From Paramoeba atlantica (lineage: Eukaryota; Protista; Discosea): 64,000 bases of DNA. Every line of letters begins with the position of its first letter. Position 1 is the stretch's first letter. The notes beneath the pieces are model-generated. The model worked only from the letters and a program-made list of their open reading frames with translations, did no database searches and was not told the origin of the DNA. Positions 37,767 through 43,680 of this stretch are shown here, one piece after another. The stretch lies in NCBI GenBank assembly GCA_977017575.1, contig CDRNVI010000036.1:1-64000 (forward strand), read 5' to 3'. A program made the position numbers and the translations under genes.

Positions 37767-38150
37767 TCACGTCTCCATAACGCATATTTTCGTATATTTG
37801 TGACGAAAAAATGTTAGCGGTGCAGGAAGATATGAAGTTCGAACGATACCCCCAAGCTCTTTGTTTCCGTTCACCATTATGAATTCCAGGCCTGTAGGAA
37901 GTGCGTCAAGCTTAGATGCACCGGAAAAGTCGTTGTATTCCAGGTTAAGGCCTTTTAATGTAGCCGGTAAATGCTCCAAATTCAGCGTCCCAGTCAAGTT
38001 GTTATCGCCTAAGTTCAGACCCCTTAAACTTGAAGGCTTTCGAGATCAATGCTCCCAGAAAATTTGTTCGAATGTAGATTGAGCGCTTCCAAGCTCTCAG
38101 GAAGGGAACCGAGTTCTATGCTGCCGTTCAACATGTTATTGTGTAAGATT
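37767..38150 (-). pseudogene. 3' half of the LRR gene interrupted by the retrotransposon (with an extra frameshift near 38030)
   Basis: LHNNMLNGSIELGSLPESLEALNLHSNKFSG... continues the repeat left open at 43341. Confidence 0.85.
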
Positions 38151-41100
38151 TGTTTGTTCATACTATTGCATAATAGCAGAGAGTTTTCAGGGTAAGGCCC
38201 GCATACAACGGGATAACCCTTTTTATTTAGCAAGCAGAGCGGTTTTCCTCGTCCGTCCATTCAGCTTCGTTCCTCCGAGCCCAGATAATATAGCTGGCCC
38301 GACCAGCCATTAAACTCATGCTTTCTCTGCATGATCTGGCTCGTTTTCGTTCCCCTTGGAACACGGCGTCAAGATAGCGACAGGATCCGCTAGGAAGTCC
38401 CCGTGCGCCGATCTCGAACGCTAGGGCGTAGCAGTTCGGGTTCTCGATTCTGTGCTCGTGGAGAAGTGAGTTATACTTCTCTGACTTCCGCCGGTGTGCG
38501 TTTTCGCAGTTCTCCTCCCACGGGACAGTTAGCTCAATGATGAACTCGGTCCCGTTCCGTAGTTTGATCCAGCCATCCGGGCGCAGTAAACTGTCGCTAC
38601 TGGTGTACCACGGGGGTGGGTTCCGTTCACCCGTGAGGTCAAAGTGGCAAGCTTCGGTGGCAGGGGATTGGCGTACGTGTCGTGCGAACTCGCGGAGAAC
38701 CATGTCGTGTCTTAGTGTGTACCTCCCTTGTTGTAAGGATGTGTTGCATGATGAAAGGACGTGTCTTGTTGTTTGTCTCGGCATATGGGACATTTTGTAT
38801 CAGAGTGATAGTTGCGACCCCATTGTGCAAGGGATACTCGGGAGGGCAGGGGGGTTAGAGTCATGACGGAGGACATGAATCGCGAGAGTTTCTCGTTTCG
38901 GATCCCATGGATGGCAGATGCAAATTCTTGTGCCATTTCTGGGTCTGACGGAAACTGCCACCAGAGGGCAGCAACAGGAGCACGTTGTCGTAGACGTGTA
39001 ATCATTTGTTCTTCGTGGGCATCACGGAGTATTTGTCGTGCGCGCTGTGGGTCGTTAAGATGATCGGCTATCTGTGCAGAATGCGGATTTGACCTTTCGC
39101 ACGCTTCCTTTGCTCTTCCTGGATGCGGAAGCGCAATGCCTTGAGCACGTTCGGGTCTCGTGATTGATGCATTTGGGTAAGTGACGTTCCGGTGCACTCG
39201 TACCAGAGTTCTGTCAGACTTTTGAGATTCCAGCCGCGGCAGGAGTATAGTACTTCTGTGCTACCGGCACGAGCCATGTTAATCCATCGTCGAAAGTGTG
39301 CTGTGACTCGCTTCTGAAGCCGCAGAACCGAGCTGAAAGAGATGCAGGGGTGGATGGTAAACTGAAACCGAAGTCGGGAAATTATAGCGTGTCTGTAGAT
39401 CCACAGCTTAGCCGGGAGATTATGGGCGCTGGCACTCGTGTTTTCGAGCCATCCCTTCAGCTTTGAGTTTAATTTCTTGAAAAGTTCGTTTAGCTGCTGA
39501 GATCCAGGGGCGAGGGTCATACCAAGAAATGAGCTTCCGGCGTCACAAATATGTGGAATTTTTTCTCCGTATGTGGTTACTGCAGGTCTTCTCGTCATGT
39601 ACCCCGGGTGCTCTTCGCCTTTCCGCGTGCTCATACATTGGACTCGACTTTTTGTGACGTTGATTTTTAATCCGATTTTGGAGAGCACCGTGGTTAGTGC
39701 GTTCAGCGAAGTTTGCATGTCACGGTCACTTTCGGTCAGAATGGTTAAATCATCGGCATACGCTTTCAAGAAGTTGTTATCGCCGTTGGGAAGGCGCATG
39801 CCAAAGGTTGGACACGAGAACCGAACGTATCGTAATACGATTTCCATGACTACTAAGAATATAGTGGGGGAGAGTGTATCGCCTTGTAAGACTCCCTTCT
39901 TTACATGTATGGGACGCGTTAGACCTTCGTAACATTTAACTCGTATGTGTGCATCAGTGAGGCTGTCTTTGATGTAGTCGACAACGTTGCAGGGTATGCC
40001 TGCCCAACCTAGGGAAGCTAGTATAATGTTATGCGGGATCGAACCAAAGGCGTTAGTGAGGACCAATTGGGCAAGACAGTACTGTCGTTTATGTCGCTGG
40101 TAGTGCTGGAGGAGGGTGCATAGAGTTTGGGTGTGCTCCAATGTCCCATTGATTTCGGGAAGAAACCCTTTCTGTATTTCTGGGTCAATCACATTGTGTC
40201 CAATAAGATGTTGGGTCAGGCGATGCGATATGATTGTGTGGAACGCTTTACCAAGGGCGCTCGTCAGTGAAATGGGGCGCCAATTTTTGGGGTTTTCCGG
40301 TGCTCCGCTCTTATGTATCAGCCTAGTGATTGCAGTTTTCCATGATGGAGGGCAGGTCGAGAAAGTCATCAGATTATTGAATACCTTAGCAAATTGATCA
40401 TGCATGGATGGACATTTCTTAAGAATCAGATTGGTGATCGTGTCTGCACCGGGTGAGCTGGAGTTCCGTTTCATATTGATGGCTGCCGTGACATCGTCTC
40501 GCGTGATTGGGTCCCAATGCATGGGTTGGGCGGCTCCTGGTCCGAGTACATCTGGAGGAGGCAGTTGGAAGAGTTCTTCACTGGGTTTAAAGCTTGACTC
40601 GAAGTATGTCTCTATGGTGTTCCGGTCGCAGGTCGGGTAAGTTGTATTCTGTACTTCATTAGCGTCAGGTTTGTCGATCGTTTCTGAAGCTGCTGTCCAC
40701 GGATTTCTGGAAAATCGCTCGGAGGCCCAGCGCTGATCGATTTCTTCTCTTTGTTTCGTCGCTTCTTCCTCACGTATCCTGACTAGCTTTCGACATTCTT
40801 TGATTTGTGCTCGTAATTCGTCTCGTTCCGTCCTACTTCTCGTATAGCGTAGCGAAGTTTTCAAGGTTGTGAGATGGTGTTTCAGTTCTTGTGCGACTCT
40901 CTCCGTGGCGAGTGGTCGATACCTTCGTCGGGCGTGTCCGGTGCTAGCTCTGATGAGGAAGCCCCTTGTCGGATTCGCTTCCGTCGCTATTTCGTAAGCA
41001 GATACGGCTAGGGCGGCGCTAAGAAGTTCCGCGTTACGTATAGCTGTCTTCCTGTCCGTTGTATCGCTTAGAAGTTCGTTGCAACGTGCACTTGCTCTCG

Positions 41101-43340
41101 CTTCAACCTGTCGCCATTGCTCTTCGCTGAGTCGTATGGTAACCTTCCCGCCAAGTATTGCATTGTGCTTTTGCAGGAGTTCTACTGCTTTTTGACTTTG
41201 AGAGGCGTCAGATTGCACTGTCGGCGTGGATGGTTCAACTTGGGAATGTATGTTATTGGGTACTGTTGTTGGGGATTCACAACCGGTTTCGTTCCCTGGT
41301 GCATAGGGTGGCCCAAATACTTTGCAACATAGGTGTGCGCACTCAAGTTTGTTTCGACACGTGTGGCGGCATGGCTGTACAGTGCGCAGTGTCGGTGCAC
41401 TACGGTTCTGTTGAATGCGACTCGGTGATGCTTCTCTGCGTGAAATACGTTCGTAACTGACTTCTTCCGCTTCCTCCAGTCTTCGATGTACTGTAATGCG
41501 TAGATGTCTGAGATGTGGTATATCCATTCCGTTAAGCGCCTTCATGACTGCACGGCCTAGTGCTCCCGCTGTTGCATACTTCTCGTTGAGTTTAAGTGTA
41601 TTATCTTGGAGAAGGGATGTCCAACTGGCATGCCGACTGATGTGTTGACTATTTTGCTCTTCGATATGTATGTAGTCGCATCCGCGGTGGTCCATGAGTT
41701 CTTCAGTTGTGGAAGGCTCGACAACCAAGTCATGAGAATTGCTTTTACCAGATAACATTTTCGAGAGTGCCGCTTGTGCTGCTTGGAGAGAAGTTATTCT
41801 AGCCCGGACGAGAGGAGATTCGCTGGCACTTCGAATATCTGGAAAGTATGTCCAGATCAGGTTTGCTACTGTTCGCACTTTCACGGGGCGGGCTCTGCTC
41901 TGGACAAAGTGAAGGTATTGCTTTTGCCGTGGTTCATGTTTTGTGTCAGGTGGTGCGGATTCGTCCCGGTTCTGTGTCGCGCTGCTTTGAAATACCCAGC
42001 CAGGGACTTCATCGTTTTCTCCTTCCTGTTCCCTGGGACAAGGCATGATTAATTCTTGCTTTTCCGTCAGCTTTTCCACCTCGTACATCTCATTGTGGTT
42101 AAGCGTGACTGTTGGGTTTGCTGGTAAATAGGGATTGCTTTCTTTCTCGACTGCAGTCGTGAATGGCTGGGATGATGTGCATAGTTTCGTGGGGCTTGTG
42201 GTTGCGGGTTCTGGTTTTCCGTCATTTTGTGGCATAGTGTCTATTTGTATATAGAAAAGCCTGATATACCAGAGAATTATTCGTTGTGCAAGTTTCATGA
42301 TGTCAAGAGCGGTCATGCTCAGTGGTTGCTTTTTCAACCGTGCGACGTTTGAACAAAATTTCTCGTGCATTATTCGTATCCGGGGCAGTAAAAGCAGAGG
42401 CGATGGGAAAATGTCATACGTTTTTCTGCAAGAAGAAGTAATGAACCTGATGGTACTACCTATGCACACATATACCATGTTCATACATTGGACAATGTGT
42501 AATGGGTTTGCTGCTTCAGAAAGCCAACCAGTTAATAGGGACAATAGGGTTTGAGTGTTCCTTGTGATGACTAGTAGTACGTGACCAAAGGGTCCATTGT
42601 TTGTTGGCACCACATTTATGACTTTCTTCTGGGAGTGTCGTATATGACGTTTGCAACAAGGGTGTTTGCAGGTGACTTTGTTCAGACAGATGTGCCTACA
42701 CGGTTTTGTCGTGATACTTTGTGTGCCAACATTTCGACGGAAAGGATTGAGGGCGTTGGGTGACGGGATTGCGCGGATGGGTGCTACTAGGAGGTGAACG
42801 GCGAGGCTAGATATCCATCTGAAGACGCTAGATATGATGATGCCAATATTCCGCATGTTGTAGAGAGTTCTGAATACTAGTATAATTGATCGGGCCATGG
42901 CAAGCGGGGAGACTTCAAAATTCCTTCGTTTCTTTGACATAACGGTATGTGATGTTACGGTGTCGCTATCCGTTATACTTTGCGCAGTTAAGTGACGCTT
43001 GCAGCACAAGTGTAAGCATTCACGTTTATTCAGACACTTGTGCTTACAGGGTTCCGCTGGGGACGATGCGGTGGTATTCGCCGAATTGCCAGTCACATGC
43101 TCGGTTTGCGTGACGTTTAGCAGATTGTCGGGAGTACTTCCGTTCTCGTTGGAAGAGGCGTCAGGAAGGGTGGGAGTTGCGCTTTGCTTGCGAACGCCGC
43201 GTGGTCCTCGTGTAAGGTCCTGCGGCGCATTCGAGTGGGATCGTTGCGCGCGGTGTCGCGCCATGTAGATTTAAACGATAAAGAAATAAAGCAACAAGGT
43301 ACAGAAACAACAAGGTACAGAAACTGTATCTTTATCGTTT
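38148..43340 (-). mobile_element. Non-LTR retrotransposon, RT + CCHC + restriction-like endonuclease (HERO/NeSL-like), ~5.2 kb, probably inactive copy
   Basis: RT motifs NWRPISL, QKGFLP, NAFGSIPH, GVLQGDTLSP, YADD; CPIC..HVLSSC; GRYTLRHD, LRPDG, IELTVPWE, RKSEKY. Single ORF broken by frameshifts near 39100 and 38770. Confidence 0.95.
43292..43340 (-). other. Spliced-leader-like exon (43308-43340) plus a truncated relic SL (43292-43307) at the 5' end of the retroelement
   Basis: AAACGATAAAGATACAGTTTCTGTACCTTGTTG + TTTCTGTACCTTGTTG. Contains the conserved kinetoplastid SL core CAGTTTCTGTAC and ends in TTG; no GT intron follows. Confidence 0.8.
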
Positions 43341-43680
43341 GAAGAATACGGAGAGTGTCCGGCAGGTGTGCTAAATCAATTTCACCTGTAAAAGAGTTCT
43401 CCGGTGCAATAAAAACAACCAGTTCTTGCTGTAAGTTATCAAGGGGAAGCTCGCTCGTCAGCCCGTTTATCGTCAGGTCCAACTTTCGTACTGTACTGGG
43501 CAACCAGTCCCATTGGACTGATCCATGAAGCTCCATATTTTCCCAAAAGATTTCTGTAATGTCGCCACCGTCCTCGCAAGTGACTCCTTTCCAATCACAG
43601 ATGGGTACCGATGCATTCCATGTGGTATGTGGATTCTCAATGGATTCTACGAATCGAATCAGAAAAAATTCCGATGGCAA
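43341..43680 (-). pseudogene. 5' half of the LRR gene interrupted by the retrotransposon
   Basis: HTTWNASVPICDWKGVTC cap; the LRRs stop at LPDTLRIL(Q). Confidence 0.85.

What the first reader, a model, noticed from the sequence alone, without database searches (positions are those of the whole stretch)
43265..43340. Retrotransposon capped by a spliced leader plus a relic SL: apparent record of two trans-splicing/retrotransposition cycles
Seen: on the minus strand the element starts AAACGATAAAGATACAGTTTCTGTACCTTGTTG (33 nt), then TTTCTGTACCTTGTTG (16 nt), then 27 nt and the ORF ATG. The 16-mer is exactly the part of the 33-mer that follows its internal AG. No GT donor follows either copy, so this is not an SL RNA gene. 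Known: GATACAGTTTCTGTAC matches the Trypanosoma cruzi SL exon core, and kinetoplastid SLs end in TTG seven nt after GTAC. Dinoflagellate retrogenes carry tandem relict SLs cut at the internal AG of the leader. Inference: the element RNA is trans-spliced, copied to DNA with its SL, then re-spliced at the AG of the old SL and copied again. An element inserted in the sense of a polycistronic unit would then need no promoter or ribozyme (unlike ingi/L1Tc) and would carry its own splice acceptor. I know of no such description in kinetoplastids.
Basis: partly seen in the sequence, partly recalled or inferred. Interest (0 to 1): 0.93.

Follow-up and report, generated by a model that had tools for sequence, protein, structure and literature searches.

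The report
Spliced-leader-capped retrotransposon with leader relic
A young jumping gene that landed in a leucine-rich-repeat gene of a kinetoplastid-type protist begins with a DNA copy of the cell's own spliced leader plus a second copy of its last 16 letters; the leader is genuine, but a genome-wide count shows the extra piece need not record two rounds of splicing and copying.

Summary
On the minus strand, 43339..43308 is an exact copy of nt 7-38 of the organism's true spliced-leader (SL) exon. I found that exon in 38 SL RNA genes (exon | GTATGAGAAGC intron, tandem ~2.56 kb arrays). 43307..43292 repeats SL nt 23-38. A 27-nt UTR and the ATG follow.

The element (38148..43339, 5192 bp) is an R2/NeSL/CRE-type retrotransposon with a restriction-like endonuclease. 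It sits in an LRR gene with no target duplication and no poly(A). A paralogous empty site fixes its ends. It is not an SL RNA gene and not a SLACS/NeSL-style insertion into one.

The "two cycles via the internal AG" reading is only partly supported.
- In 84 relic loci, only about 15% of relics start cleanly after an AG of the leader (16 nt and 22 nt).
- 10-nt (37%) and 7-nt (19%) relics dominate, and neither follows an AG.
- Some relics are separated from the leader by 1-9 extra letters.
- About 150 copies simply begin at the same nt 23 next to unrelated flank, which splicing cannot produce.

I favour a restart or template switch of reverse transcription at a hot spot in the leader (about 0.5) over AG re-splicing (about 0.3).

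This scan had already noted SL-headed elements elsewhere in this genome. The relic census is new.

The parts
38148..43339 (-). Whole retrotransposon copy, 5192 bp. It has no target-site duplication and no poly(A), and ends ...GAACAAACAAAT.
   Evidence: the paralog G000:C41 joins the two flanks directly (197832|197833); alignment of the junctions; an X1 contig joint 38147->43340 skips 5192. It is 99.2%, 99.1% and 97.8% identical to copies L005, L008 and L006.
43308..43339 (-). DNA copy of spliced-leader exon nt 7-38 (32 nt, exact).
   Evidence: Searches give the SL RNA gene exon (38 nt, AACTTTAACG...CCTTGTTG) followed by the GTATGAGAAGC intron at 38 loci.
43292..43307 (-). 16-nt relic, a second copy of SL nt 23-38. 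It starts right after the position of the leader's ACAG.
   Evidence: The same structure is seen at 11 loci in the census.
43265..43291 (-). 27-nt 5' UTR of the element. It starts 4 nt later than in copy L005.
   Evidence: comparison of four copies.
43274..43284 (-). 11-nt segment TCTTTATCGTT, perfectly complementary to SL nt 7-17. It gives a predicted 11-bp stem with the leader head.
   Evidence: MFE -12.9 kcal/mol, z -3.3. (0 of 200 shuffles reach 11 nt; found only in this family).
39068..43264 (-). ORF of 1398 aa with the reverse transcriptase domain. In this copy it is cut short relative to the 1619-aa open frame of copy L008.
   Evidence: (best solved relatives are R2 proteins, 8gh6, E 1e-25).
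38227..39067 (-). Out-of-frame remains of the C-terminal CCHC zinc knuckle and the restriction-like endonuclease (RPD...E..K). In this copy they are separated from the RT frame by two frame-breaking indels.
   Evidence: three-frame reading. table 4: another copy has +1 nt at 39082 and +7 nt at 38765; motifs read in the intact L008 frame.
38148..38226 (-). End of the 3' UTR, shared by all copies. It has a fixed terminus (...GAACAAACAA) and no A-tail.
   Evidence: 3' junctions of seven copies.
43340..43680 (-). Upstream half of the split host gene (leucine-rich-repeat protein), in the same orientation as the element.
   Evidence: LRRNT_2, E 2.7e-5. The intact paralog L011 has LRRNT_2 and LRR_1.

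Best explanation
This is a recently inserted, now frame-shifted copy of a low-copy R2/NeSL/CRE-type non-LTR retrotransposon (RT plus a C-terminal CCHC and restriction-like endonuclease).

Shown: its RNA template carried the host's genuine spliced-leader exon joined to the element's 5' UTR. Reverse transcription copied the leader back into DNA as far as nt 7.

Inferred: the extra 16-mer arose at the reverse-transcription step. cDNA synthesis tends to break off after copying SL nt 23, at the loop/5'-arm boundary of the leader's TACAG-TTT-CTGTA palindrome. It then either joins the target, giving the roughly 150 copies that simply begin at nt 23, or restarts on a second leader 3' end, giving leader + 16-nt relic. 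On this reading the relic is one member of a genome-wide class of leader 3'-end duplications (lengths 7, 10 and 16 nt, with or without filler). It is not proof of a second round of trans-splicing and retrotransposition.
For: Shown:
- Leader identity.
- Exact element ends and the empty site.
- RLE-type architecture.
- The four independent full-length copies have four different 5' structures: SL+16; SL alone; SL+10; GATACAG+flank duplication+SL.

Relic census of 84 loci, a 75% sample:
- 10 nt at 31 loci.
- 7 nt at 16 loci.
- 16 nt at 14 loci, 3 of them behind filler.
- 8-9 nt at 10 loci.
- 15 nt at 3 loci, 17 nt at 1, 22 nt at 2 (one event).
- Arrays 16+10, 15+10, 10+10, 10+9 and 9+7.
Only the 16- and 22-nt classes follow an AG.

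Other points:
- Fillers of 1-9 nt sit between leader and relic. In 4 of 4 tests no parent copy was found whose flank could have supplied the filler.
- Plain truncated heads: the 16-mer preceded by a non-G base next to unrelated flank gives 86 sampled sites (about 150 in all). The 15-mer gives 37. Positions nt 17-22 together give at most about 90.
- The relic 16:15 ratio does not differ significantly from the truncation ratio (p 0.28; 0.18 for filler-free relics).
- Template switching between leaders is directly visible upstream of some heads, where partial leader pieces are joined through TTT microhomology.
- Relic lengths cluster at 7-10 and 15-17 nt, either side of the 3' arm of the leader palindrome.
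Against: - The 16-nt class is a sharp peak exactly where the AG model predicts it. The only clean relic longer than 17 nt (22 nt) follows the leader's other AG.
- With a rough correction for ambiguous T flanks, the excess of 16 over 15 among relics becomes marginal (p 0.05-0.07).
- The restart model needs an acceptor whose 3' end is exactly SL nt 38, such as a free SL exon. Nothing here shows that such an acceptor exists.
- The hot spots at 7 and 10 nt are explained only after the fact by the weak leader hairpin (-6 kcal/mol, z -1.4).
- Plain truncations at nt 29 are not frequent, so the relic spectrum does not simply mirror the truncation spectrum.
- Counts of truncated heads may be inflated by families that inherit a 16-nt head.
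Confidence: 0.5

Rival explanations
1. A parent copy that already carried a DNA-encoded leader was transcribed by read-through. It was then trans-spliced at the ACAG inside that leader and copied back to DNA, leaving new leader + 16-nt relic. This would be a record of two cycles.
For: - The relic starts exactly after the AG.
- There are 11 filler-free 16-nt relics, against 1 of 15 nt and 1 of 17 nt. The single 22-nt relic event follows the other AG, at nt 15-16.
- Sister copies with plain SL|UTR exist in the same families.
- The element lies in the sense orientation within a minus-strand gene run.
Against: - It cannot make the 10-nt and 7-nt relics (56% of loci), the filler cases, or the roughly 150 heads that begin at nt 23 without any new leader.
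- If this were how copies propagate, relics should accumulate. More than 90% of heads have none, and only one 16+16 case was seen.
- The AG is preceded by the A-rich first half of the leader and often by A-run flanks, not by a polypyrimidine tract.
- No parent with an SL|CTTTATTTC junction exists in the assembly.
- There is no RNA evidence.
Confidence: 0.3
2. The leader is inherited as DNA, not re-added each cycle. Source copies are transcribed from their own first base, either by an internal promoter or by a captured SL RNA gene promoter. The relic would then be an old duplication carried along, or one made by polymerase slippage.
For: - One LINE copy of another family is fused exactly at the exon end to 963 nt of SL RNA gene upstream sequence, 99% identical.
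- All 13 listed copies of that family share the identical SL|UTR junction, with no AG.
- No leader-less master copy was found for that family or for this one.
- Several families have members that all begin at nt 23.
Against: - Only 1 of 34 SL-gene upstream regions is fused to an element, and none belongs to this family.
- The four copies of this family have four different heads, so the head is remade at each insertion.
- A complete leader upstream of a partial one shows that a leader was added afresh.
Confidence: 0.12
3. A SLACS/CZAR/CRE- or NeSL-like site-specific element that inserted in an SL RNA gene and carried part of its target along.
For: - The element belongs to the same endonuclease type as those families.
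- SL arrays do contain other leader-headed insertions nearby.
Against: - The flanks are an LRR gene, with an intact empty paralogous site.
- No SL intron or SL repeat-unit sequence lies next to any of the four copies.
- The leader is complete at its 3' end and lies upstream of the element. This is unlike an insertion inside the exon.
Confidence: 0.02
4. Assembly artefact, or a tandem duplication that arose after insertion by replication slippage.
For: The leader region is a k-mer hub. The short contigs of runs X1, X3 and X4 break there, so they cannot confirm the tandem arrangement.
Against: - The same precise structure is present at 10 or more other loci in different families.
- The duplication always ends at the leader/UTR boundary, which means nothing to a DNA polymerase.
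- The related 10-nt relic copy is reproduced in a second public assembly.
Confidence: 0.03

Closest known systems
Relict spliced leaders of dinoflagellate retrogenes (mRNA recycling; Slamovits and Keeling 2008, cited from my own knowledge)
   Same: A full leader is followed in DNA by a leader fragment that begins after the leader's internal AG. Arrays of several relics occur.
   Different: - Here the carrier is an autonomous endonuclease-bearing retrotransposon without poly(A), in a kinetoplastid-type genome.
- Most relics in this genome (7 and 10 nt) do not follow an AG.
- Some relics have filler letters.
- The same break point is frequent as a plain 5' end.
SLACS, CZAR, CRE1/CRE2 of trypanosomatids and NeSL-1 of C. 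elegans (site-specific RLE elements in SL RNA genes; from my own knowledge)
   Same: Both are single-ORF elements of the RLE type: RT followed by a CCHC and a PD-(D/E)xK endonuclease. Both have a physical association with spliced-leader sequence. One copy of a sister family here is fused to an SL gene promoter.
   Different: Those elements interrupt the SL exon and are flanked by SL gene sequence on both sides. This one is dispersed, sits in an LRR gene, and carries the exon's 3' 32 nt as its own 5' end.
R2 elements (solved structures 8gh6, 8ibw, 9nl2)
   Same: They are the best solved relatives of the RT (E 1e-25). Both have a fixed 3' UTR end, no A-tail, and variable 5' junctions. R2 RT is known (from my own knowledge) to jump from the 5' end of one template to the 3' end of another.
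   Different: This element does not insert in rDNA. No 5' ribozyme was tested. Its 5' end is a host spliced leader.
ingi/L1Tc with the Pr77 internal promoter/ribozyme (PMC8190864, abstract only)
   Same: Both are kinetoplastid non-LTR elements whose 5' end solves the problem of making a translatable RNA in a genome with polycistronic transcription.
   Different: Those elements have an APE-type endonuclease and a 77-nt promoter, and give unspliced transcripts. Here the head is the SL exon itself.

Membership tests
RLE-type non-LTR retrotransposon (R2/NeSL/HERO/CRE supergroup) | Reverse transcriptase domain of non-LTR type | tested here: met
   Pfam RVT_1, E 1.5e-28. Best solved relatives are R2 proteins. 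YADD motif present.
RLE-type non-LTR retrotransposon (R2/NeSL/HERO/CRE supergroup) | CCHC motif and PD-(D/E)xK restriction-like endonuclease C-terminal to the RT, in a single ORF | tested here: met
   Read by eye in the open 1619-aa frame of copy L008: CPIC...H....C at residue 1494 and RPD...E..K at 1566. In the window copy the same motifs are out of frame. No profile or structure test of the endonuclease was run.
RLE-type non-LTR retrotransposon (R2/NeSL/HERO/CRE supergroup) | Defined 3' end without a poly(A) tail | tested here: met
   Seven copies end at ...GAACAAACAA(A) next to different flanks.
SLACS/CZAR/CRE/NeSL (SL-gene-specific elements) | Insertion inside the SL RNA gene exon, with SL gene sequence on both sides | tested here: not met
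   The flanks are an LRR gene and other unrelated DNA, and an empty paralogous site exists.
SL RNA gene | Exon followed by a GT donor and the conserved intron, with promoter-bearing repeat unit upstream | tested here: not met
   Both leader copies are followed by T or C, not GT. The real genes (38 of them) have GTATGAGAAGC and a conserved upstream region.
Dinoflagellate-type relict-leader retrocopies (mRNA recycling) | A relic that begins right after the leader's internal AG | tested here: met
   The relic is SL nt 23-38, and nt 21-22 are AG.
Dinoflagellate-type relict-leader retrocopies (mRNA recycling) | Relics genome-wide are explained by AG acceptor use | tested here: not met
   13 of 84 relic loci are AG-defined and filler-free. 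The 10-nt and 7-nt relics account for 47 loci.
Dinoflagellate-type relict-leader retrocopies (mRNA recycling) | Transcripts of leader-bearing DNA copies are re-spliced | not testable with these tools
   Only assembled contigs of five runs were available. The one possible RNA run lacks the element.

The most novel reading that the evidence does not exclude
Kinetoplastid-type genomes recycle trans-spliced retrotransposon RNA as dinoflagellates recycle mRNAs. A dispersed copy is read through and re-spliced at the AG inside its own DNA-encoded leader, then copied again. Each copy therefore brings its own acceptor, and the 16- and 22-nt relics count the cycles.
Probability: 0.3. Interest if true: 0.8.

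Novelty: new variant of a known kind. Interest (0 to 1): 0.6.

Why it matters
About 900 DNA copies of the spliced-leader exon head retroelements in this genome, so their RNA intermediates carry the normal mRNA 5' end. In my three paper searches I found no report of this for kinetoplastids.

The relics are a natural experiment on how that leader gets there. Three sets of data give concrete, testable signatures that distinguish spliceosomal re-use of an encoded leader from template switching by the reverse transcriptase:
- the length spectrum of the relics (7, 10, 16 nt);
- the hot spot at nt 23;
- the single fusion of a LINE to an SL gene promoter.

If re-splicing is shown, it would extend mRNA recycling from dinoflagellates to Euglenozoa. 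If template switching is shown, it would point to a free-leader or leader-RNA acceptor, and to a block to reverse transcription at nt 22/23 of the leader.

Tried and rejected
- **Rfam:** a scan of an SL gene locus and a SINE-like locus gave no meaningful hit.
- **Paper searches:** three searches (the leader sequence itself; leader + retrotransposon + relic; leader + template switching) found no description of this. One paper that looked promising was about intron loss.
- **Read data:** only Logan contigs were available. They confirmed the element's ends and the very high depth of the leader, but could not show RNA 5' ends. The possible RNA run X5 has the leader at high depth but not the element.
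- **Test of "filler = parent flank downstream of an AG":** four filler+relic+UTR strings were each unique in the genome. A fifth search was badly designed, because its leading wildcard excluded the known site, and it means nothing.
- **Search for a leader-less master copy:** none was found for this family or for family F.
- **SL intron behind the promoter-fused LINE:** absent, so that copy is not a simple insertion into an SL gene.
- **Anti-leader complementarity in the UTRs of other families:** not above shuffles.
- **5'-truncated copies of this family (L009, L010, L012):** they carry no leader.
One Pfam call had inverted coordinates.

Full report
**1. Observation**

Read on the minus strand, the window shows flank ...CGTATTCTTC, then AAACGATAAAGATACAGTTTCTGTACCTTGTTG (43340..43308). 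This is followed by TTTCTGTACCTTGTTG (43307..43292), then 27 nt, then the ATG at 43264.
- The ORF 39068..43264 has 1398 aa and a reverse transcriptase domain.
- The 16-mer is expected 0.06 times per window by chance.
- It occurs 963 times in the 45.7-Mb genome, against 0 for the reversed control.
- The 23-mer GATACAG...TTG occurs 700 times.

**2. Is it the organism's spliced leader? Yes.**

Among the sites where the leader is followed by GTA (171), two kinds exist.
- One kind is a dispersed SINE-like family that continues GTAC(A/T)TTTT.
- The other kind has a conserved upstream region, the exon AACTTTAACGATAAAGATACAGTTTCTGTACCTTGTTG, and the intron GTATGAGAAGCTTCG....

There are 38 genes of the second kind, mostly in tandem arrays of about 2.56 kb (12 on C97, 9 on C107). 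From my own knowledge, the intron start is the canonical kinetoplastid one.

Window 43339..43308 equals exon nt 7-38 exactly. The relic equals nt 23-38. In the contigs of the public runs, the leader region stands about 100-fold above the element's depth in the DNA-like runs. It is very deep in the one possible RNA run, which lacks the element.

**3. The element**

A BLAST of the region against the whole genome gives several copies at 98-99% identity. It also gives a paralogous locus on C41 in which the two flanks are contiguous.
- Alignment of the junctions puts the insertion at 38148..43339 (5192 bp), with no target duplication and no A-tail. All copies end ...GAACAAACAA(A).
- A contig of run X1 shows the same 5192-bp skip.
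- The flanks encode a leucine-rich-repeat protein in the same orientation.
- Copy L008 has one open frame of 1619 aa with YADD, a CCHC motif and an RPD...E..K endonuclease motif.
- The nearest solved proteins are R2. Database relatives are RLE-type elements.
- The window copy has two frame-breaking indels relative to the other copies.

Only four independent full-length insertions exist. L006 and L007 are the same insertion on two contigs, and it is also present in a second public assembly.

**4. The four copies have four different heads**

- Window: SL nt 7-38 + 16-nt relic + C + TTTATTTC...
- L005: SL nt 7-38 + ATTTC + TTTATTTC...
- L006: SL nt 13-38 + 10-nt relic TACCTTGTTG + A + TTTATTTC...
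- L008: GATACAG + 9 nt of duplicated flank + SL nt 16-38 + T + TTTATTTC...

So the head is remade at each insertion. The 10-nt relic of the sister copy does not follow an AG. Three 5'-truncated copies carry no leader.

**5. Genome-wide relic census**

I searched for a leader end followed within 26 nt by another leader end. This returned 89 matches at 84 loci, a 75% sample. Twenty of the loci were read in full.

| Relic next to the leader | Loci | Notes |
|---|---|---|
| 10 nt | 31 | does not follow an AG |
| 7 nt | 16 | does not follow an AG |
| 16 nt | 14 | 11 precise; 3 behind fillers AA, CCTCTA, ATTACCTTG |
| 8 nt | 6 | |
| 9 nt | 4 | |
| 15 nt | 3 | |
| 11-13 nt | 4 | all behind fillers |
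| 17 nt | 1 | |
| 22 nt | 2 | one event; follows the leader's other AG at nt 15-16 |

- Arrays of 16+10, 15+10, 10+10, 10+9 and 9+7 occur.
- Clean AG-defined relics are therefore 13 of 84 loci.
- At least 6 precise SL+16 events lie in families whose other members are plain SL|UTR.
- All relics end at the exact leader 3' end, whatever the UTR that follows.

**6. Plain 5' ends**

- The 16-mer preceded by a base other than G, next to unrelated flank, gives 86 sampled sites, about 150 in the genome.
- The 15-mer preceded by a non-T base gives 37.
- From the totals (963 16-mers, 700 23-mers), heads beginning at nt 17-22 together number at most about 90.
- Genuine heads beginning at nt 29 are few, and the control for that short pattern is high.

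So nt 23 is the commonest break point even when no second leader is attached, and splicing cannot produce that. The relic ratio 16:15 (15:3, or 11:1 without filler) does not differ significantly from 86:37 (p 0.28 and 0.18). It becomes marginal (p 0.07 and 0.05) after a rough correction for T-flank ambiguity.

**7. How do single-leader copies keep the same junction?**

In an abundant sister family (UTR AATTATTTTCTTTATTTC...), all 13 listed copies have the identical SL|UTR junction, and there is no AG in front of the UTR. No leader-less master was found for that family or for this one.

One copy of that family, on C41, is preceded by 963 nt that are 99% identical to the SL RNA gene repeat unit up to the last exon base.
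- That amounts to an SL gene promoter driving a LINE.
- Its 3' flank is not SL gene sequence.
- It is the only such fusion among 34 SL-gene upstream regions.

This shows one splice-independent way to make a leader-headed RNA, but it does not cover the window's family.

**8. Weighing the models**

Points for the AG re-splicing model:
- It predicted the 16-nt and 22-nt positions in advance.
- It has a precedent in dinoflagellates.

Points against the AG re-splicing model:
- It cannot make 56% of the relic loci, the fillers, or the nt-23 heads.
- It predicts accumulating relics, which are not seen.

Points for a reverse-transcription model (break at hot spots, then restart on another leader end):
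- It covers all relic classes.
- Leader-to-leader switches with TTT microhomology are visible upstream of some heads.
- In 4 of 4 tests no parent copy was found whose flank could have supplied the filler.
- The relic lengths cluster on either side of the 3' arm of the leader palindrome TACAG-TTT-CTGTA.

Weaknesses of the reverse-transcription model:
- The acceptor ending at nt 38 is unproven.
- The hairpin is weak.
- The 10-nt peak does not match the truncation spectrum.

I put the reverse-transcription origin at about 0.5, AG re-splicing at about 0.3, and an inherited or promoter-driven leader with an old duplication at about 0.1.

**9. Family-specific detail**

The UTR holds TCTTTATCGTT, the exact complement of SL nt 7-17.
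- Two of the four heads, the window's and L005's, stop at nt 7, the foot of that stem.
- The same complementarity would let the nascent cDNA fold back once nt 7-17 are copied.
- This is inference, but it fits the view that structure at the reverse-transcription step shapes these 5' ends.

**10. Relation to earlier notes of this scan**

Several earlier reports on other pieces of this genome already described leader-headed LINEs, SINEs and a tyrosine-recombinase element. First readers also noted the antisense segment and the RLE element in this window. I re-derived those points here. The relic census, the nt-23 hot spot and the promoter fusion are additions.

Noticed in passing
G000:C41:279916-280877 (L020 116-1078), element from L020 1043 on: A LINE of another family is fused, exactly at the last base of the SL exon, to 963 nt that are 99% identical to the SL RNA gene repeat unit, promoter region included. 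The element carries a nested 5.8-kb insertion. Its 3' flank is not SL gene sequence. It is a candidate promoter-driven master copy for that family, whose 13 listed copies share one junction.
   Followed up: partly
window 43274-43284 (-) paired with 43329-43339 (-): The 5' UTR of this family contains an 11-nt perfect antisense of SL nt 7-17. The predicted stem has MFE -12.9 kcal/mol, z -3.3. Two of four heads end exactly at nt 7. Other families show no such complementarity.
   Followed up: partly
genome-wide, e.g. G000:C4:247640, C44:23829, C42:13182: About 150 element copies begin exactly at SL nt 23 (TTTCTGTACC...) next to unrelated flank. This is at least tenfold more than at each of nt 17-22. 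It is either a hot spot for the end of reverse transcription or a fixed 5' end of some families.
   Followed up: partly
L001-L004, L014-L016, L018 (e.g. G000:C2:38802): About 130 dispersed SINE-like elements have the leader followed by GTAC(A/T)TTTT and a conserved hairpin. The junction therefore mimics a 5' splice site (TTG|GTA). One copy (L018) has a 13-nt leader + 16-nt relic in front of it.
   Followed up: no
G000:C11:3782 and 6675; C97:23382 and 25926; C11:274151; C24:3424: These SL RNA gene variants have changed exons: CTGTCCCTTGTTG, AAAGGTACAG and GATGCAATTTCTG. Pairs of genes lie only 297 bp apart inside the 2.6-kb units.
   Followed up: no
G000:C1:9711-25074; C18:35308-43738; C44:23829-39980; C4:247640-266426: There are head-to-tail tandem arrays of leader-headed units (periods about 5.09, 2.09, 5.37 and 4.9 kb). 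In each array the unit starts with a leader or a 16-nt leader remnant directly after the previous unit's 3' end.
   Followed up: no
L030/L032 (G000:C20:57.4 kb, C63:378.8 kb); G000:C1:55096, C3:807172: Partial leader pieces (for example nt 9-22, or nt 6-14) lie upstream of a nearly complete leader and are joined through TTT microhomology. This is direct evidence of switching between leader templates at the 5' junction.
   Followed up: partly
L008 (G000:C54:~215.9 kb): In the 5' junction of this sister copy, GATACAG is followed by a 9-nt repeat of the flank (TACGAGTGG) and then by GATACAG... again. This is a typical template-jump scar.
   Followed up: no
L006 (C60) = L007 (C51) = L047 (ENA ERZ24900291 ctg4008l); many C1/C3 and C2/C12 pairs: The same insertions with the same flanks appear on two contigs. 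The assembly therefore holds haplotigs or recent segmental duplications, and copy counts overstate the number of independent events.
   Followed up: partly
window 39082 and 38765: Relative to another copy seen in run X1, the window copy lacks 1 nt and 7 nt at these places. This puts the CCHC/endonuclease part out of frame, so the copy is dead.
   Followed up: yes
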